From: Octopus sinensis
Lineage: Eukaryota
Reading direction: 5' to 3'
Length of the DNA stretch: 64,000 nucleotides
NCBI RefSeq assembly: GCF_006345805.1
Contig: NC_043003.1
Coordinates: forward strand, 67,518,001 to 67,582,000
The notes beneath the pieces are model-generated. The model worked only from the letters and a program-made list of their open reading frames with translations. It searched no databases and was not told the DNA's origin. Position 1 is the first letter of the stretch, and every line of letters starts with the position of its first letter. The position numbers and the translations under genes were made by a program. This document shows, one piece after another, positions 1 to 51,071 of the stretch.

Positions 1-126
1 AAACTTCGCCGACGTGGACTTTGCTTTTTGTCCTTGTGGGGTTGATTATATAATCACAAGTTATACCATTTGTCTGTCGTTGTTTTTCCCCTCTATGTTT
101 AGCACCTTGTGGGCAATAATGAAATA
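1..126 (+). mobile_element. SINE family A fragment
   Basis: Matches the 3' half of 27896-28125. Confidence 0.65.
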
Positions 127-8481: not shown

Positions 8482-8711
8482 TATTTCTTTATTACCCAAA
8501 AGGAGCTAAACACAGAGGGGACAACCAAGGACAGACATAGGTATTAAGTCGATTACATCGACCCCAGTGCGTAACTGGTACTTAATTTATCGACCCCGAA
8601 AGGATGAAAGGCAAAGTCAACCTCGGCGGAATTTGAACTCACAACGTAACGCAGACGAAATACCGCTAAGCCTTTCGCCCGGCGTGCTAAAGTTTCTGCC
8701 AGCTCGCCGCC
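8482..8711 (-). mobile_element. tRNA-derived SINE family A, full length
   Basis: Reverse complement of 27896-28125, with A-box-like TGGCAGAAACG and B-box-like GTT(G/C)AAATTCC. Confidence 0.8.
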
Positions 8712-9321: not shown

Positions 9322-9977
9322 AGCTGATGGCCTTGCACTTACATATCAGAAGCTTTGCTCTCACGGGCAATGATACTCCTCCTTAAATAATATCGTCTAG
9401 GCCTCTGAATACATGTGCACATGCATGGTCACCATTGATTAGCAAGGCCTTATACATTGTATTACTGGGCCTGTAATTATAGAGTGATGACAGAAATAAA
9501 ATACGTTTATTTTCAAACAATGATAAATAATATGAGCTTATCTTAGTTGGTCACCCAGCTCCGTAGCATTAACTGGAGCTAGATTTATGCATTCCCATGT
9601 CTGATCAAGATATGAAGAACGACAACAAAATATCTTTTATAAAAGTTGTACAAAGATAAACAGAAAGAGTTAGCAACGAGAAGCTTATAGGTCATCGCAT
9701 AATATATGATGTTTCATTTTATATTAACGCATTTAGTTTGAATCAGTATATTTTTCTTAAGCGTAAGCAAGTAATCTACTGCTTGAACTGAAACTATATA
9801 ACCACGTGAGGCGTTCAATTAGGATGAGATATATACTCATGCAAATAAACAAGGTTGCAGAATTTATAAGTGGAAGATTTGTTTCCGCTACAACCAATAA
9901 CTATATAAGCAGTGATTTGTTGCTACTCTTAGTTTTGTTAGAGTTGGTGTTGGTAGTGGGAATTTATGGCACTGGTA

Positions 9978-17417: not shown

Positions 17418-18008
17418 AATATACTTTTCTATTCGAGCAACAAGGCTCGCAATTTTGGGAGAGGTGGCAATTCGATGAGACCTATCACAGTACGGAACTG
17501 CTACATAACTTATCAAACACGAAAGAATGAAAAGCAAAGTCAACCTCGGCGGAATTTGAACTCAAAACATAATGACCGACGAAATACAGCTAGGCATCCC
17601 CCCCCCCCGGCTTGTTAACGTTTCTGCCATTTCGCCACTTTAAAATATTCTTTTCTACTAAGGATGAAAGGCAAAGTCCATATCGGCGGATTTTGAACTC
17701 AGAACATAAAGAAAGACAAAATACAGCTAAGAATTCCACCCGACGTGCTAACATTTCTGCCTTCTCCCCGCTTTAAAATATTCTTTTCTACTAAGGATGA
17801 AAGGCAAATTCAACCTCGGCAAAATTTGAACTCAGAACGTAAAGACAGACGAAATACAGCTAGGCATTTCAACCGGCGTGCTAACGTTTCTGCCATCTCG
17901 CCACTTTAAAATATTCTTTTCTACTAAGGATGAAAGGCAAAGTCGATTTCGGTGGAATTTGAACTCAGAACCTAAAGACAGACGAAATACAGCTAAGAAT
18001 TTCATCCC
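17418..18008 (-). repeat. Tandem array of SINE-A-derived 133-bp units
   Basis: Linker tttaaaatattcttttctactaagg recurs at 17639, 17772 and 17905. Confidence 0.8.
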
Positions 18009-27895: not shown

Positions 27896-28125
27896 GGCGG
27901 CGAGCTGGTAGAAACGTTAGCACGCCGGGCGAAATTCGTAGCCGTATTTCGTCTGTCGTTGCGTTCCGAGTTCAAATTCCGCCGAGGTCGACTTTGCCTT
28001 TCATTCTTTCGGGGTCGATAAATTAAGTACCAGTTACGCACTGGGGTCGATGTAATCGATTTAATCCCTTTGTCTGTCCTTGTTTGTCCCCTCTGTGTTT
28101 AGCCCCTTGTGGGTAGTAAAGAAAT
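27896..28125 (+). mobile_element. tRNA-derived SINE family A, full length
   Basis: ggcggcgagctggtagaaacgttagc..gagttcaaattcc..gtgggtagtaaagaaat. More than 10 related copies in the window. Confidence 0.8.
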
Positions 28126-28194: not shown

Positions 28195-28754
28195 GTGTGT
28201 GTGTGTGTGTGTGTACCGTTGCCATATATGTACATATATATGTATATATATTTATGCAAATATGTTTATATATATATATATATATGTGTGTGTACTGTTG
28301 CCATATATGTACATATATATGTATATATATTTATGCAAATATGTTTATATATATATAAGAATGAATGTTTTTATATATAATGAACGTGAAATACAGGAAG
28401 GGACGAACACGGAACACAGACAAATCATTCGAAGCCTTCAATCTTCAGTCAGACACCGAATCATCATAGCAAATTTCGGCTGTTCAATTCTGATATTTGC
28501 TCCAACTCGGCCAGCCCCAAGAAAAAAAACTAAGCTGTAAGCATTATATTTCTTGGTAGAAGACAGGAATGTGAACGCACAAGACGGATGTGAATACAAG
28601 AGACGAAAACGAAATTGAAAACAGTAATGAATAAACAAAATATATATAACGGTGGTTGTCATACGACTTTAGACCAAATGAGACAAAAACAACAACAACA
28701 ACATAGCTGGCGTAGAAATAATTACCGTTTCGGTAGCGGGGACACATGTTGGTC

Positions 28755-30469
28755 CATTTTTTTATTACCCACTAGGGGCCACGAAGAGGGAACATTACAA
28801 AACATGGGGGACACAAAACAATGCGATTAAAATTATGATTAAATGAATGTTAAAATGAAAAAATGATAACATGAAAGCGATGCTAACGGCCCCCTCCGCC
28901 AGCATCACTTACCTTTCCGTTTCCTATCACGATTCCAAAGTTTTTCACCTCACCTTTCATTTCTCTCTCATATCTCTCTATCATATCATCCCTCATAAAT
29001 GCTGATAAACAATTTATACGTAGTTCATTGCACTTGCTCATCAAAGAGCCCATGAGTTCAAAATCGAATACCGCATAGCTTCCATCCTCATACTCCTGCC
29101 ATACATCGTCTTCAAAAAGCCTTCTTGCGTTCTCAGTATCCCCCTTCCCCACAACACATAAAAAGTAGGACTGGGTCTTGTGTATGTTCTGTGTGTCAGT
29201 TTTCGTTTTTCTTGTAGGCGGGGAGTGGGTGGGATTGCTGTTTGCGGGGGCAGGATGGGTCTCCAAGGGTGTGGGTGGTATTGGGGTGGGTTGGGGCTTC
29301 GCACAGGTTTTCCTTTTCTTTCCTTTTCTCTTCTTTCTGCCCTCCTCACACTCTTTTTGCATCTCCTCCTCCTCTGTCATTTCCCTTTCCGTCTGCTTCT
29401 CTTTAATTTCTTCTTCTTTTGGGGCCTCCTCTTTTGGAGTTTCCTCAACGATTTCCTTTTCTCTTGGTGGGGGAGGGCAGAAGGCTCTTATATGGCCCCT
29501 CAGGCCACACTTGTAACAACGTGGAGCTCTGCCCTCCACCCACACTCTCATAATCACGTCTCCCAATTTAATGCACTCCGCCAGGTCCACCAGTACCTCG
29601 CTCTCCGCCTGCACGTTTAGCTCCACTATTACGCCTCTCCAGCCCTCGGTCTTGACCGAGGCATGGAGAATATCTACTTTCTCCTCGTGGCCGCTGATCA
29701 CAGCCGCCACAATCCACTCAGCCTCCACGTTTGGTGGCACTCCCTCCACCCTTACTCGTGTGATCTTTCTATTCAAGTACATAGGTAAAAGTGTTACCTT
29801 TTCTGACTTCACCGCCTTCACCGCCATCTTCCTCGCTGCAGTCTCGCTTTTAAAATGTACCACTACAGTACCGTACTTCGATCCTCGAGTCAGAAAAATG
29901 ATTTCCTCCTCCGATCTTCTCAGGGCCTCCTCTATCCATTCCATGTTTACGATCTCTATTTTCTTTCTTTCGTTCGCGAACACCCTGTAAATTATGGTCC
30001 TTTTATTGTACCATTCCTTTCTCTTTGGTGGTGGTTCCAGTTCCACCTCGCCGCTGTCCTTCCTCATATACCTCTGGAAACCTGGCAATTTTTCCAGGTT
30101 TATTTCCTTTTCCTGTTCCGTCTTCTTTTTTGCAACTCCTGCGTACGTTTTCCTGTTTTTTGTCTCCACATTATTTACATCACCGATTTGCTCGTCTTCA
30201 GAGTCCGATGTCTCCGACAAGCTCTCAAATATCCATTCTTCCTCCGACTCCTCCACTAGGGAGTGGTCATCCATCTCCTCCCGCCTGACAGGCCAAAACG
30301 GCCGTCAAAACAGAAAAAGTGTAACGCGCAGAACCAGTGGAACGCGAAACCGCTTTAACGCCGTTCAAAATTTCCACAACAACAACAATTCTTTTTTATC
30401 TTTTTTTACCGAATTTTACGAGCGTAAAAAACACGACCGAACTCAAACTGACGAACAGACAACTGATCC
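28755..30469 (-). mobile_element. ORF1-only non-autonomous non-LTR retroelement, copy 1
   Basis: 5' end GGATCAGTTG (Inr-like TCAGTT), about 195-nt 5' UTR, ORF1, 128-nt 3' UTR ending AATAAAAAAATG. Flanked by gcggggacacatgttggtc at 28736-28754 and 30470-30488. Confidence 0.8.
28883..30274 (-). CDS. Gag-like ORF1 protein (463 aa) of a non-LTR retroelement, Tx1/L1-type
   Basis: Uninterrupted 463-aa ORF. Acidic N-terminus, TYAGVAKK motif, RRM-like region, CX2CX4HX4C knuckle CYKCGLRGHIRAFC (29477-29518), E/K-rich stretch with KKRKGKKRK, P/T-rich linker. Clade call is inferred from architecture. Confidence 0.85.
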   Translation of the reverse strand: MDDHSLVEESEEEWIFESLSETSDSEDEQIGDVNNVETKNRKTYAGVAKKKTEQEKEINLEKLPGFQRYMRKDSGEVELEPPPKRKEWYNKRTIIYRVFANERKKIEIVNMEWIEEALRRSEEEIIFLTRGSKYGTVVVHFKSETAARKMAVKAVKSEKVTLLPMYLNRKITRVRVEGVPPNVEAEWIVAAVISGHEEKVDILHASVKTEGWRGVIVELNVQAESEVLVDLAECIKLGDVIMRVWVEGRAPRCYKCGLRGHIRAFCPPPPREKEIVEETPKEEAPKEEEIKEKQTEREMTEEEEMQKECEEGRKKRKGKKRKTCAKPQPTPIPPTPLETHPAPANSNPTHSPPTRKTKTDTQNIHKTQSYFLCVVGKGDTENARRLFEDDVWQEYEDGSYAVFDFELMGSLMSKCNELRINCLSAFMRDDMIERYEREMKGEVKNFGIVIGNGKVSDAGGGGR

Positions 30470-30488
30470 GCGGGGACACATGTTGGTC

Positions 30489-32204
30489 CATTTTTTTATT
30501 ACCCACTAGGGGCCACGAAGAGGGAACATTACAAAACATGGGGGACACAAAACAATGCGATTAAAATTATGATTAAATGAATGTTAAAATGAAAAAATGA
30601 TAACATGAAAGCGATGCTAACGGCCCCCTCCGCCAGCATCACTTACCTTTCCGTTTCCTATCACGATTCCAAAGTTTTTCACCTCACCTTTCATTTCTCT
30701 CTCATATCTCTCTATCATATCATCCTCATAAATGCTGATAAACAATTTATACGTAGTTCATTGCACTTGCTCATCAAAGAGCCATGAGTTCAAAATCGAA
30801 TACCGCATAGCTTCCATCCTCATACTCCTGCCATACATCGTCTTCAAAAAGCCTTCTTGCGTTCTCAGTATCCCCCTTCCCCACAACACATAAAAAGTAG
30901 GACTGGGTCTTTTGTATGTTCTGTATGTCTGTTTTCGTTTTTCTTGTAGGCGGGGAGTGGGTGGGATTGCTGTTTGCGGGGGAAGGATGGGTCTCCAAGG
31001 GTGTGGGTGGTATTGGGGTGGGTTGGGGCTTCGCACAGGTTTTCCTTTTCTTTCCTTTTCTCTTCTTTCGGCCCTCCTCACACTCTTTTTGCATCTCCTC
31101 CTCCTCTGTCATTTCCCTTTCCGTCTGCTTCTCTTTAATTTCTTCTTCTTTTGGGGCCTCCTCTTTTGGAGTTTCCTCAACGATTTCCTTTTCTCTTGGT
31201 GGGGGAGGGCAGAAGGCTCTTATGTGGCCCCTCAGGCCACACTTGTAACAACGTGGCGCTCTGCCCTCCACCCACACTCTCATAATCACGTCTCCCAATT
31301 TAATGCTCTCCGCCAGGTCCACCAGTACCTCGCTCTCCGCCTGCACGTTTAGCTCCACTATTACGCCTCTCCAGCCCTCGGTCTTGACCGAGGCATGGTC
31401 ATTATCCACTTTCTCCTCGTGGCCGCTGATCACAGCCGCCACAATCCACTCAGCCTCAACGTTTGGTGGCACTCCCTCCACCCTTACTCGTGTAATCCTT
31501 CTATTCAAGTACATTGGTAAAAGTGTTACCTTTTCTGACTTCACTGTCTTCACCGCCATCTTCCTCGCTGCAGTCTCGCTTTTAAAATGTACCACTACAG
31601 TACCGTACTTCGATCCTCGAGTCAGAAAAATGATTTCCTCCTCCGATCTTCTCAGGGCCTCCTCTATCCATTCCATGTTTATAATTTCTATTTTCTTTCT
31701 TTCGTTCGCGAACACCCTGTAAATTATGGTCCTTTTATTGTACCATTCCTTTCTCTTTGGTGGTGGTTCCAGTTCCACCTCGCCGCTGTCCTTCCTCATA
31801 TACCTCTGGAAACCTGGCAATTTTTCTAGGTTTATTTCTTTTTCCTGTTCCGTCTTCTTTTTTGCAACTCCTGCGTACGTTTTCCTGTTTTTTGTCTCCA
31901 CATTATTTACATCACCGATTTGCTCGTCTTCAGAGTTCGATGTCTCCGACAAGCTCTCAAATATCCAATCTTCCTCCGACTCCTCCACTAGGGAGTGGTC
32001 ATCCATCTCCTCCCGCCTGACAGGCCAAAACGGCCGTCAAAACAGAAAAAGTGTAACGCGCAGAACCAGTGAAACGCGAAACCGCTTTAACGCCGTTCAA
32101 AATTTCCACAACAACAACAACAATTCTTTTTGATCTTTTTTACCGAATTTTACGAGCGTAAAAAAACACGACCGAACTCAAACTGACGAACAGACAACTG
32201 ATCC
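30489..32204 (-). mobile_element. ORF1-only non-autonomous non-LTR retroelement, copy 2
   Basis: Same ends and layout as copy 1. Third target copy at 32205-32223. Repeat period 1734-1735 bp. Confidence 0.8.
30774..32006 (-). pseudogene. Second copy of the gag-like ORF1, frameshifted near its 3' end (410 aa)
   Basis: About 98% identical to 28883-30274. Two 1-bp deletions in C-runs (gagcccatg to gagccatg near 30782; catccctc to catcctc near 30724) truncate it at ELMAL*. These could be homopolymer sequencing errors. Confidence 0.8.
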
Positions 32205-32587
32205 GCGGGGACACATGTTGGTCGAGATACGAAGGCCAACAGAATAGTTTAAGAAGCAGCAGGTCGCAGGAGAGAGAGAAAGAGAGACAGAGAGAGAGGG
32301 AATCAAAGAGGGTGGAAGGCAGGGGACAGAATCAGTGACCAAGAGAAAAGGAGAAAGAAGGGATTAAGGAGGATGGGAGGAGGATGGGAGGAAGAGAGGG
32401 GAAGAATCGGAGGGCGCCAAAAAGTTTGGTGAAGAAGCAATGGCGGGTAGGAAAGACAGAGTGTATAGAAGCCGTGCAGGGTTTAAAATTGGACAAACAA
32501 ACGGGGGGCGGGTGCACGTAACGCCGCAATAATATAAGAATGAATGTTTTTATATATAATGAACGTGAAATACAGGAAGGGACGAAC

Positions 32588-32620
<33 letters not shown>

Positions 32621-43152: not shown

Positions 43153-45261
43153 TATATATGTAAAAGAGAGAGACAGAGTCAGAGCGATATATATATATGA
43201 GAGGTATTGATATCCAGAAGATCCACGATTACAGGTATGGCTATGTAAGTGCTACGGGTGGACCGTAGTTAGACTCTCGTTTCGATAATAATACGAGTGA
43301 GGAGTATAATGCAAGTCTTGCATGAGTATGTGTATGTTCAATAAAATGAGAGTGCAAAGCTGAGCTGAAGGTATTCTGTGTCAAACAGCTTTACTCTGCG
43401 TGCTTTATCTTCCTTACTAAGACAACAGTCCAAATACTTATTGATCAGACCACGTGTTGAATATATGTGTGTATATGTCCCTGCGTGTGTGTAATTTCGG
43501 TGGTGCAAACACGTCAAATGAAGCTGAATTTCATCTGCAAGAATGCAAGAGACATCATAGCAATATTGTCGTCACCGGCTAACTCATGAAATGCTGTAAC
43601 AATATCGTCGTCAATCGATCACCCTGGACTGTAACGTAGAGCATTATCTGAATTCTGACTGGTAATGTACTGCAAAATACGATAGATATATTGCACACCT
43701 TTTAGTACCACTAAGGAATTGCAAAACTATATAATTTAAGTTTGTCTTGTGAAGTGAATTATCATAAATGCTACTGAGAAATTATGAATAAAGTAAAAAT
43801 AGTGAAGGAACTAAAATTTCTTTAATCTCACCCGATATTTCGGACTCCAGCATTCACAATTCTGCGTTTAAATGAACGATCAATATGGTGATAAAGACTT
43901 CCTCCTTAGGGATATTATTCGTTTTTCACCAACAGAAATTAGTCTCAGTTGAAACAAGAAGATAATCATTCTTGGCAGATCAATAAGCAAACAGACAAAT
44001 AGCCATTTGGAGATAAAATTATGTGTATTACAAGTGGATATCTTTTAATCTATTGCATTAATACATTTTTAGCGAATGGTTTTTAGGAAATTATTGTTTT
44101 ATATAAGTATCTGTTAGAGCTTGTATCCATATAAAACGACATTCGCGCACAGTATTTTGAGAGATGTAGACTAGGATATCGTTTGGAAAATTGTTACGAA
44201 TCAAATAATAAATTCTCAATAGTCAAACACCATTATACACTGTAATTATTCGAAATAATTTTTTTTAAATACACCATCATGCTTGCAGACGGATGTAAAC
44301 AAAGTAGCGCGAGGAAAGAGAATGTGTCAAAAACATTGCATTTGTCGTGGTTCTAAGTTATTGATAGAAAGGGTGGAACTCGTATAATATATGAATAGTC
44401 ATACTGCAGATCTTTCACACAGAAGGTCTCATTACAATAATGCTTCTCCAGAGCTAGGAACTTACAAAGATCTTTAAATATATCTAGAAATAACCAATAT
44501 AAAGTGCCAACACAATTTCATGAGGTGAAAGTATACCCACCAAGAAGGGAAAATATGTGTTCTACTACCCTCCGTATATTCGCGCAGACTTTACTATCAC
44601 GTTTTCAAGCAGAGTGTCAGACGATATTGTTTTCCGTTTGTTTTAAATTGTTATGTCTTCCTGTATTTGTTTGCAAGAAGACTATTTATATCCCAAATCA
44701 TGTTTCTTTATTATATCTGGTGTAAGGTATACTCTTCGCTGAAGAGATATAATAAGAATAAAACATGTCCTGAGTTGTTTAGAATGCTTTCGAGCACAGA
44801 TTCAATACTTAATGCATTGTTCGCCGAAGTTGATTGTTACAAAAATGATTCAAAAGCCCCGCTACGTAAATGAATTTAATTCGATAACATTTATTAGGTG
44901 AGTGTATTGAGTAAGTTGCCGCAAATATTTGCAATTTCTTTTGGATACAGCTGGCGTTTCGACGAATTTTTCTTAGAACTTTGTAATTAAAAAGGTGTAC
45001 AAGAAATTTTGCGTTTGCCTCGTATTTGCCGCCACATATAGTTATGTATATATGCTTATATACACAGACGTGTATATGTGCATGTCTGTGTGTATGATTG
45101 CATGTATGAGTGTGTACGTATCTGTGTGTTTTTATATATCCTCTCTAGGTATGTTAAGCGTTTGCCTCTTCTTACGCTGTTTAACGTGAAGAGCAGCCAC
45201 AGGCCTTTTAAAAGCCAAACTGAGAACGATTCTTGTTGTCACTGTTTTTATTGTTGTTGTT

Positions 45262-45884
45262 AAGGCTGCGAGCTGGCAGAATCGTTAACACGCTAAGCAA
45301 AATGCTTAGCGGCATTTCGCCCGTCGCTGCGTTCTGAGTTCGATTTCCACTGAAGTCGACTTTTCCTTTAATCAATTCGGGGTGGATAAATTGAGTAGCA
45401 GTTACGTACTGGGGTCAATAGAATCGACTATCCAACTCATTTACCTTTTGACTATAGTAGAAAGGATTATTGCTGTTGTTGATAAGGCGGCGAGTTGGCA
45501 GAATCGTGAGCATGCCGGGTGGAAAGATTAGCGGTATTTCGTCTGCCGTTACGTTCTGAGTTCAAATTCCGCGGAGGTCGACTTTGCCTTTCATCATTTC
45601 GGGGTCGATTAAATAAGTACCAGTTACGCACTGGGGTCGATATAATCGACTTAATTCCTTTGTTTGACCTTGTTTGTCTCCTCTGTGTTTAGCCCCTTGT
45701 GGGTAGTAAAGAAATAGGTATTTCGTCTGCAGCCAAGTTCTGAGTTCAAATTCCGCCTAGGTTGACTTTGCTTTTCATCATTTCTGGGTCGGTGAAATAA
45801 GTACCAGTCAAGTGCTGGGGTCAATGTAAACAAATTGCCCCCTTCCCTCAAATTCCAGTCCATGTACCTGTAGTAGAAATGATT
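45262..45884 (+). mobile_element. Cluster of three SINE-A units
   Basis: Units at 45262-45430, 45486-45716 and 45717-45884 (the last lacks its head). Confidence 0.75.
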
Positions 45885-50240: not shown

Positions 50241-51071
50241 AAGGTGGCGAGCGGCCAGAAACGTTAGCACGCCGGGCGAAATGCTTTCTGGTATTTAGTC
50301 TGCCGCTGCGTTCTGAGTTCAAATTCCGCCGAGGTTGACTTTGCCTTTCATCCTTTCGGGGTCGATAAATTAATCGACTTAATCATTTTGCCTGTCGTTG
50401 TTTGTCCCCTCTATGTTTAGTCCCTTGTGGGCAAAAAAGAAATAAGAAACGTTAGCACGCCGGGCGAAATGCTTAGCGATATTTCGTCTAACTGTACGTT
50501 CTGAGTTCAAATTCCGCCGAGGTTGACTTTGCCTTTCATCCTTTCGTGGTCGATAAATTAAGCACCAGTTACACACTGGGGTCGATGTAATCGACTTAAT
50601 CCGTTTGTCTGGTCTTGTTTGTCCTCTCTGTGTGTAGCCCCTTGTGGTCAGTAAAGAAATAAGAAACGTTAGCACGCCGAGAATGCCTAGATATTTCGTC
50701 TGTCTTTCGTTCTGACTTCAAATTCCGCTGATATCGACTTTGCCTATCATCCTTGCGGGCTCGATAAATTAACTACCAGTTGCATACTGGAGTCGATCTA
50801 ATCGACTGGCTCCCTCTGCCCCACCAAAAATATATCAGGCCTTGTGCCTAGAATAGAAAACAATATATATTTATGCATGAAGGGAGCGAGCTTGCAGAAC
50901 ATTTAGCACGGTGGTTAAGATGCTTACCAGTATTTCGTTCGACTTTAATTTCTGATTTCAAATCTTACCAAGGTCGACTTCATCTTTTAACCCTTTCGGG
51001 GTCAATTAAACAGGTATCAGTTAAGCAACGGTGTCCCCTAAGTTGCTGGGCATATGACAAAATTTGAAACC
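50241..51071 (+). mobile_element. SINE-A trimer (50241-50862) plus a decayed fourth copy (50880-51071)
   Basis: Junctions aaagaaata|agaaacgttagc at 50444/50445 and 50661/50662. Confidence 0.75.

What the first reader, a model, noticed from the sequence alone, without database searches (positions are those of the whole stretch)
28736..32223. Full-length retroelement that encodes only ORF1, arrayed in tandem at one 19-bp target
Seen: two 1.72-kb units head-to-tail, with gcggggacacatgttggtc three times (28736, 30470, 32205), once on each flank and once at the junction. Each unit has an identical 5' end (GGATCAGTTG, Inr-like), a 5' UTR, one CCHC/RRM-like ORF and a 3' UTR ending AATAAAAAAA. There is no room for APE endonuclease or RT. 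Established: Tx1-clade elements are often sequence-specific and stack at their target, and ORF1-only derivatives are known for mammalian L1 (HAL1). Inference: this is a non-autonomous, target-specific half-LINE that makes its own RNA-binding protein and borrows ORF2 from a Tx1-like partner. I do not know of such an element described in cephalopods.
Basis: partly seen in the sequence, partly recalled or inferred. Interest (0 to 1): 0.85.

Follow-up and report, generated by a model that had tools for sequence, protein, structure and literature searches.

The report
Octopus ORF1-only half-LINE, tandem dimer
Two head-to-tail copies of a 1.7-kb octopus retrotransposon that keeps only its RNA-binding gene and must borrow the copying enzyme of a related full-length element; this kind of parasite-of-a-parasite is known in mammals and flies but apparently undescribed in cephalopods, and it does not home to one target sequence as first proposed.

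Summary
Two 1,715/1,716-nt units (sense strand is minus) are 98% identical and are separated and flanked by three exact copies of one 19-mer. Each unit has a 5' UTR, one ORF (463 aa; two RRMs plus a CCHC knuckle) and a 128-nt 3' UTR. Homologous ORF1s sit upstream of APE+RT+zf-RVT ORF2s in autonomous octopod LINEs. The unit keeps those LINEs' ORF1/ORF2 junction (GTAAGTGATG, including the ORF2 start codon) and their 3' tail, so almost all of ORF2 was deleted. A 52%-identical lineage shares the same deletion with dN/dS <= 0.18, and a third ORF1-only lineage branches separately. This is therefore an old, selected state and not a one-off. The abundant octopus SINE carries the same tail. The ORF1-only, ORF2-borrowing reading is supported. 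The target-specific reading is not: four insertions have four unrelated TSDs of 17-19 nt, and one copy is 5'-truncated. The dimer is either a double insertion at one nick site (favoured, because differences between the units are enriched for synonymous changes, P about 0.003) or an unequal exchange between the TSDs. It is a new member of a known kind (HAL1-like or HeT-A-like). A perfect 57-nt repeat bracketing the whole block is unexplained.

The parts
32205..32223 (-). 19-nt target-site duplication, upstream copy in element orientation (GACCAACATGTGTCCCCGC on the minus strand)
   Evidence: Exact, one of three copies; none expected by chance.
30489..32204 (-). Unit u2 (1,716 nt), the upstream copy in element orientation: 5' UTR, ORF1 (30774-32006, cut to 410 aa) and 3' UTR
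   Evidence: 98.0% identical to u1. Two GGG-to-GG contractions near 30783 and 30725 break the frame.
30470..30488 (-). 19-nt TSD copy at the head-to-tail junction
   Evidence: A TSD copy inside a tandem junction is the published signature of a double insertion (PMC5932611); unequal exchange between flanking TSDs gives the same layout.
28755..30469 (-). Unit u1 (1,715 nt), the downstream copy, with an intact ORF
30275..30469 (-). 5' UTR of u1 (195 nt); starts GGATCAGTTG (TCAGTT at nt 4-9, Inr-like, untested)
   Evidence: Both units share the same 5' end at the TSD boundary.
28883..30274 (-). ORF1 of u1, 463 aa: variable N-terminus, two RRMs (about aa 60-245), a CCHC knuckle (aa 252-265), a low-complexity linker and a C-terminal alpha/beta domain
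   Evidence: 317 homologues found by exhaustive HMMER. AF2 with the family alignment gives pLDDT >93 for aa 50-270. Foldseek top hits are tandem-RRM proteins, E about 1e-5, probability 1.0. C252, C255 and C265 are (nearly) invariant.
28903..28912 (-). Relic of the LINE ORF1/ORF2 junction: GTAAGTGATG (conserved GGTAAGT motif plus the former ORF2 start codon)
   Evidence: Identical to the junction of the autonomous O. vulgaris LINE (L006: TAAG-GTAAGT-G-ATG, where the ATG starts ORF2). The same motif occurs in L008, L005, L003 and in ORF1-only lineages B and C.
28755..28882 (-). 3' UTR of u1 (128 nt), ending in the clade-wide tail ...GGCCCCTAGTGGGTAATAAAAAAATG
   Evidence: The tail aligns with the 3' ends of autonomous LINEs L003, L004 and L006 and with the octopus SINE tail.
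28767..28779 (-). Small hairpin in the tail of u1 (4-bp stem, loop CTAGT; CTTGT in relatives); the same in u2 at 30501-30513
   Evidence: Across 15 tails 91.7% of cells pair versus 76% in shuffles (0/500), and 3 of 4 pairs change on both sides. The structure was derived by eye from these sequences.
28736..28754 (-). 19-nt TSD, downstream copy
28410..28735 (.). Left arm of the 'host' sequence carrying the 19-mer site; its first ~160 nt resemble an old repeat
   Evidence: 71% similar to L002 19412-19565 and to L001 23468-23529, with the similarity starting at 28413.
32224..32531 (.). Right arm of the 'host' sequence (purine-rich, no match elsewhere)
28353..28409 (.). Outer 57-nt perfect direct repeat, left copy (abuts a TA microsatellite)
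   Evidence: family D10.
32532..32588 (.). Outer 57-nt perfect direct repeat, right copy (abuts a TA microsatellite)
   Evidence: family D10.

Best explanation
Each 1.72-kb unit is a non-autonomous 'half-LINE'. It derives from an octopod APE-type LINE that has a Type I ORF1 (two RRMs plus a CCHC knuckle), and nearly all of ORF2 was deleted, from just after the ORF2 start codon to the last ~110 nt of the 3' UTR. What is shown: the unit keeps a 5' UTR, a selected ORF1, the ORF1/ORF2 junction motif and the clade's 3' tail with a small hairpin. What is inferred: it is transcribed from its own 5' end, its RNA is coated by its own ORF1 protein, and it is reverse-transcribed at a nicked chromosomal site by the ORF2 protein of a related autonomous LINE that recognises the shared tail. 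That inference rests on its 17-19-nt TSDs, the 5' truncation of a copy, and the defined tail in place of a long poly(A). The same tail is carried by the abundant octopus tRNA-like SINE, so LINE, SINE and half-LINE share one machinery. Insertion is not specific to one sequence. The dimer in the window most likely arose when a second, slightly different copy inserted at the same nick site as the first, which leaves a third TSD copy at the junction. This last step is the least certain (about 0.5); the confidence given here is for the identity of the element as an ORF1-only, trans-mobilised LINE derivative.
For: ORF1 family: 317 homologues, 71 at E<=1e-10, mostly Octopus and Argonauta; tandem-RRM fold plus CCHC. 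Autonomous relatives with a homologous ORF1 followed by Exo_endo_phos + RVT_1 + zf-RVT: L004, L003, L005, L006/L009; L009 copy 1 has an uninterrupted 1,131-aa ORF2. Deletion mapped: GTAAGTGATG in the unit equals the L006 ORF1/ORF2 junction, where the ATG starts ORF2. Shared 3' tail in LINEs, SINEs and ORF1-only units, with a covarying hairpin. [quoted passage not shown] Not a one-off: A and B share the post-ATG sequence, are 52% identical in the ORF1 core, and have saturated pS (0.72-0.78) with dN/dS <=0.18; C branches apart (A+B+C monophyly 8% bootstrap). Double insertion: a full TSD sits in the junction (PMC5932611), and 13 of 25 ORF differences between u1 and u2 are synonymous against about 24-26% expected (P = 0.002-0.004).
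Against: Only two loci of this exact family (A) and four ORF1-only insertions in all could be reached, so copy number, the share of copies with ORF2 and the target spectrum are not measured genome-wide. The nearest sampled autonomous ORF1 is only ~33% identical, so the actual ORF2 donor is not identified. No transcript, protein or retrotransposition evidence was available. The full-length 5' end rests on two adjacent copies that may not be independent. For the double-insertion step: both units have the same 5' end, so there is no distinct-truncation proof. There is no substitution in the last 425 nt (P = 3e-4), which points to gene conversion between the units; conversion from dispersed copies could also mimic the synonymous excess. 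Unequal exchange between the flanking TSDs gives the same layout.
Confidence: 0.82

Rival explanations
1. There was a single insertion, later duplicated locally. Unequal exchange or replication slippage between the two flanking 19-nt TSDs turned TSD-unit-TSD into TSD-unit-TSD-unit-TSD. The copies then diverged by ~2% and were partly re-homogenised by gene conversion. This rivals only the dimer-origin step, not the identity of the element.
For: It produces exactly the observed layout. Both units share the same 5' end. The element has no fixed target. The last 425 nt plus the TSDs are substitution-free, as expected for conversion between neighbours. Tandem arrays of the related LINE and of SINEs show that local amplification is common in these genomes.
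Against: Differences between the units are enriched for synonymous changes (13 of 25, P about 0.002-0.004), which is not expected from neutral decay in place. 19 nt is a very short substrate for homologous exchange. u1 still has an intact 463-aa ORF.
Confidence: 0.35
2. One reading: a sequence-specific (Tx1-like) half-LINE that homes to the 19-mer GACCAACATGTGTCCCCGC and stacks there.
For: Three exact copies of the 19-mer with a unit between each. Type I ORF1p is typical of the Tx1 group (PMC5203782). Stacking recurs in the clade.
Against: The family-A copy in L001 has a different 17-nt TSD and L001 has no 19-mer even at 3 mismatches. Lineages B and C sit in two further unrelated targets. The 19-mer (up to 4 mismatches allowed) is absent from the loci held (L001-L008) and occurs in the window only at the three sites. 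The target is not a known RNA gene. The surrounding 'host' is not repeated in the window.
Confidence: 0.05
3. Assembly artefact: one unit, or two haplotypic alleles, falsely assembled as a tandem duplicate.
For: Both ORF-breaking differences in u2 and the other indels lie in short homopolymer or microsatellite runs, typical of consensus errors. A related array in the O. vulgaris assembly ends in a gap.
Against: There is no N in the window. The duplication boundaries fall exactly at element plus TSD, which assembly errors would not respect. The 27 substitutions are concentrated in one part of the unit, and 2.4% divergence there is high for alleles.
Confidence: 0.05
4. A host gene, not a mobile element: a domesticated ORF1-derived RNA-binding gene (L1TD1-like) that was tandemly duplicated.
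For: There is purifying selection on the ORF. Several homologues are annotated as genes in octopus assemblies.
Against: The units are bounded by TSDs and end in the LINE/SINE tail. A 5'-truncated copy with its own TSD lies on another chromosome region. Related lineages are inserted in SINEs and other sites. The annotated 'genes' are chimeric or fragmentary models.
Confidence: 0.03

Closest known systems
HAL1 (half-L1) of mammals
   Same: A non-autonomous LINE derivative that encodes only ORF1p and depends on the ORF2p of an autonomous relative. HAL1 arose independently several times (PMC5753468); here too ORF2 seems to have been lost at least twice.
   Different: HAL1 derives from L1 with a Type II ORF1p (coiled coil, RRM, CTD; Transposase_22) and uses a poly(A) tail. 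The octopus unit has a Type I ORF1p (2 RRMs + CCHC, no Transposase_22 hit), a defined non-poly(A) tail with a hairpin shared with a SINE, and keeps the ORF1/ORF2 junction with the ORF2 ATG.
HeT-A of Drosophila telomeres
   Same: A long-lived non-LTR element that encodes only a Gag/ORF1-type protein, has no RT of its own, and forms head-to-tail arrays (PMC5537684, listed; PMC5932611).
   Different: HeT-A belongs to the Jockey group and adds onto chromosome ends without TSDs. The octopus unit inserts internally with 17-19-nt TSDs and has a different ORF1 architecture.
Tx1-group LINEs (L1/Tx1 superfamily)
   Same: Type I ORF1p variants (RRM + zf-CCHC) are described as typical of Tx1-group elements in non-mammalian animals (PMC5203782). 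The ORF2 of the autonomous relatives has APE + RT + zf-RVT. L1-Tx1 is annotated in coleoid repeat libraries (PMC8967140).
   Different: Many Tx1 elements are sequence-specific; four insertions here have unrelated targets. Clade membership by RT phylogeny was not tested.
TE tandem dimers by double insertion (R1, P element, jockey in Drosophila)
   Same: Two copies of one element lie head-to-tail with a copy of the target-site duplication in the junction (PMC5932611).
   Different: The strongest proof used there, different 5' truncations in the two copies, is absent: both units are full length.
LINE/SINE pairs with a common 3' tail (stringent type)
   Same: The 3' ~45 nt, including a small hairpin, are shared by the autonomous LINE, the dominant octopus SINE and the ORF1-only unit.
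   Different: The third partner here carries a protein-coding ORF1 and so is not a SINE.

Membership tests
ORF1-only non-autonomous LINE derivative (half-LINE, HAL1-type) | ORF homologous to the ORF1 of autonomous LINEs | tested here: met
   28-35% identity over ~230 aa to ORF1s that precede APE/RT ORF2s in L003, L004, L006 and L008 (tblastn E 1e-20 to 1e-42); same domain order.
ORF1-only non-autonomous LINE derivative (half-LINE, HAL1-type) | No endonuclease or reverse transcriptase coding capacity | tested here: met
   1,392 of 1,715 nt are ORF1. No ORF2-probe hit anywhere in the window. Only 128 nt follow the stop.
ORF1-only non-autonomous LINE derivative (half-LINE, HAL1-type) | Retains the parental LINE's terminal sequences needed for mobilisation | tested here: met
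   3' tail and hairpin shared with L003, L004 and L006; inter-ORF motif and ORF2 ATG retained. 5' UTR homology to a LINE was not established.
ORF1-only non-autonomous LINE derivative (half-LINE, HAL1-type) | Dispersed copies with TSDs and 5' truncation, i.e. the deleted form itself transposes | tested here: met
   L001 truncated copy with a 17-nt TSD; lineages B and C complete with their own TSDs. Only four insertions were sampled.
ORF1-only non-autonomous LINE derivative (half-LINE, HAL1-type) | Mobilised in trans by the ORF2 protein of an autonomous element | not testable with these tools
   Inferred from the shared tail. A candidate donor with an intact 1,131-aa ORF2 exists (L009 copy 1).
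Tx1 clade / sequence-specific LINE | RT-domain phylogeny places the (partner) element in Tx1 | not tested
   No reference RT set was available, and source names of ORF2 homologues were uninformative.
Tx1 clade / sequence-specific LINE | Type I ORF1p (RRM + CCHC) | tested here: met
   definition from PMC5203782.
Tx1 clade / sequence-specific LINE | Insertion into one specific target sequence | tested here: not met
   Four unrelated TSDs: GACCAACATGTGTCCCCGC, GAAAGGTAGGAGAGTCC, CAGAAACGTTAGCACGCCG and CTGGGTTCG.CTA... The 19-mer is absent from the loci searched.
L1 sensu stricto (HAL1 proper) | Type II ORF1p (Transposase_22) and a poly(A) tail | tested here: not met
   Pfam gives only a weak zf-CCHC hit. 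Copies end in ...AATAAAGAAAT(A/G) with no long A run.
HeT-A-type telomeric gag-only element | End-addition arrays without TSDs | tested here: not met
   Exact 19-nt TSDs flank and separate the units, and unique sequence lies on both sides.
TE dimer formed by double insertion | Copy of the TSD inside the tandem junction | tested here: met
   30470-30488 is identical to both flanking copies.
TE dimer formed by double insertion | Evidence that the two copies are independent insertions (different truncations, or differences that predate insertion) | tested here: inconclusive
   Same 5' end in both units. Synonymous excess among differences (P about 0.002-0.004) favours independence, but the substitution-free 3' 425 nt suggests conversion.
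Stringent LINE/SINE common-tail system | 3' tail sequence and structure shared between the autonomous and the dependent elements | tested here: met

The most novel reading that the evidence does not exclude
The machinery of this LINE clade tends to re-use an already occupied nick site. Dimers such as this one would then be transposition products, and they would seed the many head-to-tail LINE, SINE and half-LINE arrays seen in octopus genomes. On this reading the ORF1-only lineage is an ancient, self-sustaining 'gag-only' hyperparasite that competes with the dominant octopus SINE for one ORF2 protein. It may also have kept the conserved GGUAAGU junction motif for a function, either translation re-initiation or use as a splice donor into host exons, as in the O. 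vulgaris gene model P0021.
Probability: 0.25. Interest if true: 0.6.

Novelty: new member of a known kind. Interest (0 to 1): 0.5.

Why it matters
Octopus genomes are about half repeats and are dominated by SINEs (PMC8967140), but the published work on active octopus LINEs that I found concerns RTE and Dong elements (PMC9115989). This locus shows a LINE clade with an RRM+CCHC ORF1 whose 3' tail is shared by the dominant SINE and by a protein-coding ORF1-only dependant. That names a candidate driver for the SINE expansion. It also adds an invertebrate example, outside L1 proper, to the short list of ORF1-only LINE parasites (HAL1, HeT-A). ORF1 stayed under strong selection long after ORF2 was lost, so the element needs its own ORF1 protein, which bears on the open question of what ORF1 proteins contribute in cis. 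The dimer, with its junction TSD, is a clean case for studying how retroelement dimers seed tandem repeats.

Tried and rejected
1. The word-indexed protein search with the ORF found nothing, and with a family alignment it returned only P0021. The exhaustive HMMER search was needed.
2. An exact-protein look-up of the window ORF found nothing on record.
3. Rfam (gathering thresholds) and tRNA scans of the window were negative, so the 19-mer target is not a known RNA gene.
4. Pfam on the ORF gave only a sub-threshold zinc knuckle, and a PDB sequence search gave only knuckle-level hits.
5. The single-sequence AF2 model was unusable (pLDDT 42). The alignment-based model was good only for aa 50-270.
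6. Naming the ORF2 clade from source names failed.
7. Extending the autonomous array to find its right flank ran into a 100-N assembly gap.
8. The synonymous/non-synonymous test on that array had too few differences to be informative.
9. A metagenome scan for more family-A copies found none.
10. The Logan ~1.7-kb contigs (L010-L013) carry an ORF1 homologue without ORF2, but they lack the octopus tail and junction relic, and their species and library type are unknown. I did not count them as evidence.
11. Origin of the deletion by splicing at the GTAAGT site was considered and rejected, because the GTAAGT and the following ATG are retained in the unit.
12. Template jumping was considered for the dimer and rejected, because a complete TSD lies in the junction, unlike the SINE and LINE arrays.
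13. The Bao and Jurka 2010 HAL1 paper is not held in the library.

Full report
**Observation**

The 19-mer GCGGGGACACATGTTGGTC occurs exactly three times in the window, at 28736, 30470 and 32205. No match is expected by chance, even allowing three mismatches. Two units lie between the copies: u1 (28755-30469, 1,715 nt) and u2 (30489-32204, 1,716 nt). The sense strand is the minus strand. In element orientation the order is TSD-u2-TSD-u1-TSD.

A careful realignment gives 27 substitutions and five indel events, for 98.0% identity. All the indels lie in homopolymer or microsatellite runs. u1 carries a 463-aa ORF (28883-30274), by far the longest ORF in the 64-kb window. It has a 195-nt 5' UTR and a 128-nt 3' UTR. 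The u2 ORF is cut short by two GGG-to-GG contractions, which could also be consensus errors.

**The protein**

Pfam sees only a sub-threshold zinc knuckle. An exhaustive HMMER search finds 317 homologues, 71 of them at E<=1e-10. Those with names come almost entirely from Octopus vulgaris, O. sinensis, O. bimaculoides and Argonauta hians.

The family shares one architecture: a variable N-terminus, two blocks with RRM-like sequence, one CCHC knuckle (C252, C255 and C265 nearly invariant), a low-complexity linker and, in the long members, a C-terminal 'FP.DVG' domain. With the family alignment, AlphaFold models residues 50-270 at pLDDT >93. Foldseek matches that core to tandem-RRM proteins (IMP3 RRM12, Sxl, HuR, hnRNP A1 UP1, NONO/SFPQ) at E about 1e-5 and probability 1.0. 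This is the 'Type I' ORF1p of Khazina and Weichenrieder (at least one RRM plus CCHC). Ivancevic et al. describe it as typical of Tx1-group elements in non-mammalian animals (PMC5203782).

**Autonomous relatives**

- *Argonauta hians* (L004): a homologous 527-aa ORF1 is followed 39 nt later by an ORF2 with Exo_endo_phos, RVT_1 and zf-RVT.
- *O. sinensis* (L003): the same layout in decayed form.
- An unnamed ENA contig (L005): ORF1 followed by RT and zf-RVT.
- *O. vulgaris* (L006/L009): at least three head-to-tail copies, 99.0-99.6% identical, with a period of about 5.27 kb. Copy 1 has an uninterrupted 1,131-aa ORF2. Copy 3 runs into a 100-N assembly gap.

**How the unit derives from such a LINE**

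Two features map the deletion.

1. *The ORF1/ORF2 junction.* In the autonomous elements the junction carries a conserved GGTAAGT immediately before the ORF2 start codon: TAAG-GTAAGT-G-ATG in L006, GTAAGT-C-ATG in L008, and variants in L005 and L003. The window unit has the identical GTAAGTGATG at unit nt 1558-1567 (window 28903-28912). After about 20 nt it runs into the 3' UTR.
2. *The 3' end.* The last ~45 nt of the unit (…TGTCCCCCATGTTTTGT…GGCCCCTAGTGGGTAATAAAAAAATG) align with the 3' ends of the L003, L004 and L006 LINEs.

The unit is therefore a LINE that lost ORF2 from just after its ATG up to the terminal ~110 nt. Splicing at the GTAAGT cannot be the cause, because that motif is retained.

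**The tail**

The same tail ends the abundant octopus tRNA-like SINE (…TTGTTTGTCCCCTCTGTGTTTAGCCCCTTGTGGGTAGTAAAGAAAT). It is present six times in the window and more than twenty times in L001.

Within the tail, a 4-bp stem around a constant CTTGT loop covaries between lineages (CCC/GGG, GCC/GGC, GGC/GCC). 91.7% of cells are paired versus 76% in shuffles (0 of 500 reach the observed value). Three of four pairs change on both sides, and slid controls give 22-43%. This helix is tiny and I derived it by eye from the same sequences, so it is supporting evidence only.

A LINE, a SINE and an ORF1-only element sharing one structured tail is the classical 'stringent' arrangement, in which the RT recognises the 3' end of its template.

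**The deleted form transposes and is old**

- *Lineage A, second copy (L001, O. vulgaris):* 91% identical, comprising only unit nt 982-1714. It ends in the same tail and is flanked by its own 17-nt duplication GAAAGGTAGGAGAGTCC.
- *Lineage B (L002, O. sinensis):* 52% identical in the ORF1 core. A complete 1.6-kb ORF1-only element with a 19-nt TSD (CAGAAA[C/T]GTTAGCACGCCG) inside a SINE.
- *Lineage C (L007, O. vulgaris):* about 30% identical, about 1.73 kb, same tail, with a ~17-nt TSD.

A and B share the sequence that follows the relic ATG (…GCGCTTTCAT.TT.TCATTTT…), so they inherited one deletion. Since then synonymous sites have saturated (pS 0.72-0.78) while pN is 0.26-0.33, giving dN/dS <=0.18.

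In an ORF1 tree, A+B (100% bootstrap) group with the autonomous L006 and L008 lineages (78%). C falls outside, and A+B+C are monophyletic in only 8% of replicates. ORF2 was therefore probably lost at least twice.

**Target specificity**

The four ORF1-only insertions have four unrelated TSDs of 17-19 nt. The 19-mer is absent from L001 even at three mismatches, and from the loci held (L001-L008) allowing up to four mismatches. It is not part of a known RNA gene, and the surrounding sequence is not repeated in the window. I consider the sequence-specific model unlikely (about 0.05).

**Origin of the dimer**

A TSD copy inside a tandem junction is the published signature of two insertions at one site. 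It has been reported even for LINEs without strict site preference, such as jockey (PMC5932611). Unequal exchange between the two flanking TSDs of a single insertion gives the same layout.

*For independent insertions.* 25 of the 27 substitutions lie in ORF codons 13-365, and 13 of them are synonymous, against 24-26% expected from the codon content and the observed transition bias (P = 0.002-0.004). Such a pattern arises in active source lineages, not during neutral decay in place.

*Against independent insertions, or at least complicating the picture.* Both units have the same 5' end. The last 425 nt carry no substitution (P = 3e-4), which suggests gene conversion; conversion from dispersed copies could also import 'selected' differences.

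I put double insertion at roughly 0.5 and local duplication at 0.35.

The other arrays seen here (the L006/L009 LINE array, and SINE arrays in the window and L001) have no separate TSD at their junctions. The SINE units all start at an internal position that shares 6-7 nt with the tail end (…GAAAT|AGGTATTTCG…, …GAAAT|AAGAAACG…). They are better explained by template jumping at microhomology or by array amplification, and they do not argue for a fixed target.

**Unexplained**

A perfect 57-nt direct repeat (28353-28409 and 32532-32588) brackets the whole block, 326 and 308 nt outside the outer TSDs. Both copies abut a TA microsatellite. The first ~160 nt inside the left copy resemble an old repeat also present in L002 and L001, with the similarity starting at the boundary. 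The 19-mer may therefore lie in an older inserted element that has an unusually long duplication. I could not test this.

**Comparison and verdict**

In function the unit is the octopod counterpart of mammalian HAL1, which encodes ORF1p only and arose repeatedly (PMC5753468), and of Drosophila HeT-A, which is gag-only and forms head-to-tail arrays. It is a member of neither. It has no Transposase_22 and no poly(A) tail, it does not add onto chromosome ends, and it has TSDs.

Membership of the Tx1 clade is plausible from ORF1 type and ORF2 domains but was not tested by RT phylogeny. The defining Tx1-like habit of a fixed target was tested and not met.

I found no description of such an element in cephalopods in the searchable literature. 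I rate it a new member of a known kind, with interest of about 0.5.

Noticed in passing
window 28353-28409 and 32532-32588: A perfect 57-nt direct repeat brackets the whole host + dimer block (spacing 4,179 nt), and each copy abuts a TA microsatellite. It could be an unusually long TSD of an older insertion that carries the 19-mer site, or the remnant of a larger duplication.
   Followed up: partly
window 103-124, 8484-8505(-), 28103-28124, 45693-45714, 50421-50442, 50638-50659; more than 20 sites in L001: The dominant octopus tRNA-like SINE ends in the same ~45-nt tail as the autonomous RRM+CCHC LINEs and the ORF1-only units. This points to this LINE clade as a candidate driver of the SINE expansion; published octopus LINE work concerns RTE and Dong elements.
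   Followed up: partly
window 50371-50807, 45252-45651, 17523-18001; L001 12050-12825: There are tandem arrays of 5'-truncated SINE units. Every unit starts at the same internal SINE position, which shares 6-7 nt with the tail end (AGGTATT or AGAAAC). This suggests template jumping at microhomology or array amplification. Most dispersed SINE tails are followed by AGGT[AG], so the true SINE 3' end may be ...GAAATAGGTA.
   Followed up: partly
L009 4445-19184 (O. vulgaris OX597840.1, 31862384-31883409, reversed); same region as L006: A head-to-tail array of at least 3 full autonomous LINEs, 99.0-99.6% identical, period ~5.27 kb. Copy 1 has an intact 1,131-aa ORF2. Junctions have ~10 variable nt and no clear TSD. 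The array ends in a 100-N assembly gap.
   Followed up: partly
window 28903-28912(-); L006 ~9333-9342; L008 1850-1859; L005 ~12260; L003 ~11805; L002 10901-10910; L007 ~9152: A consensus 5' splice-site-like GGTAAGT is conserved at the ORF1/ORF2 junction across octopod LINE lineages and one non-octopod contig, directly before the ORF2 ATG. It may serve termination-reinitiation or U1 binding. The O. vulgaris gene model P0021 uses it as a donor into exons up to 62 kb away (L001).
   Followed up: partly
P0033, P0065, P0095, P0003 (database proteins): Several annotated 'genes' are chimeras of this ORF1 with host domains (LDL-receptor class A repeats, WD40 propellers) or carry misleading names ('EPM2A-interacting 1-like'). 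ORF1-only elements are leaking into octopus gene sets.
   Followed up: no
It may be a transcript of another ORF1-only element or a domesticated gene in an unidentified species. It has neither the octopus tail nor the GTAAGT relic.
   Followed up: partly
window u1 versus u2 (28755-32204): Among the 27 substitutions, u1-to-u2 changes include 7 G>A but only 2 A>G. In the other direction this would be an A-to-G excess in u1, which could reflect editing of a template RNA in an animal with heavy ADAR activity. The numbers are too small to test.
   Followed up: no
window 28410-28570; L002 19412-19565; L001 23468-23529: The left arm of the sequence that hosts the dimer belongs to an old, unclassified repeat family (about 71-77% similarity).
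   Followed up: partly
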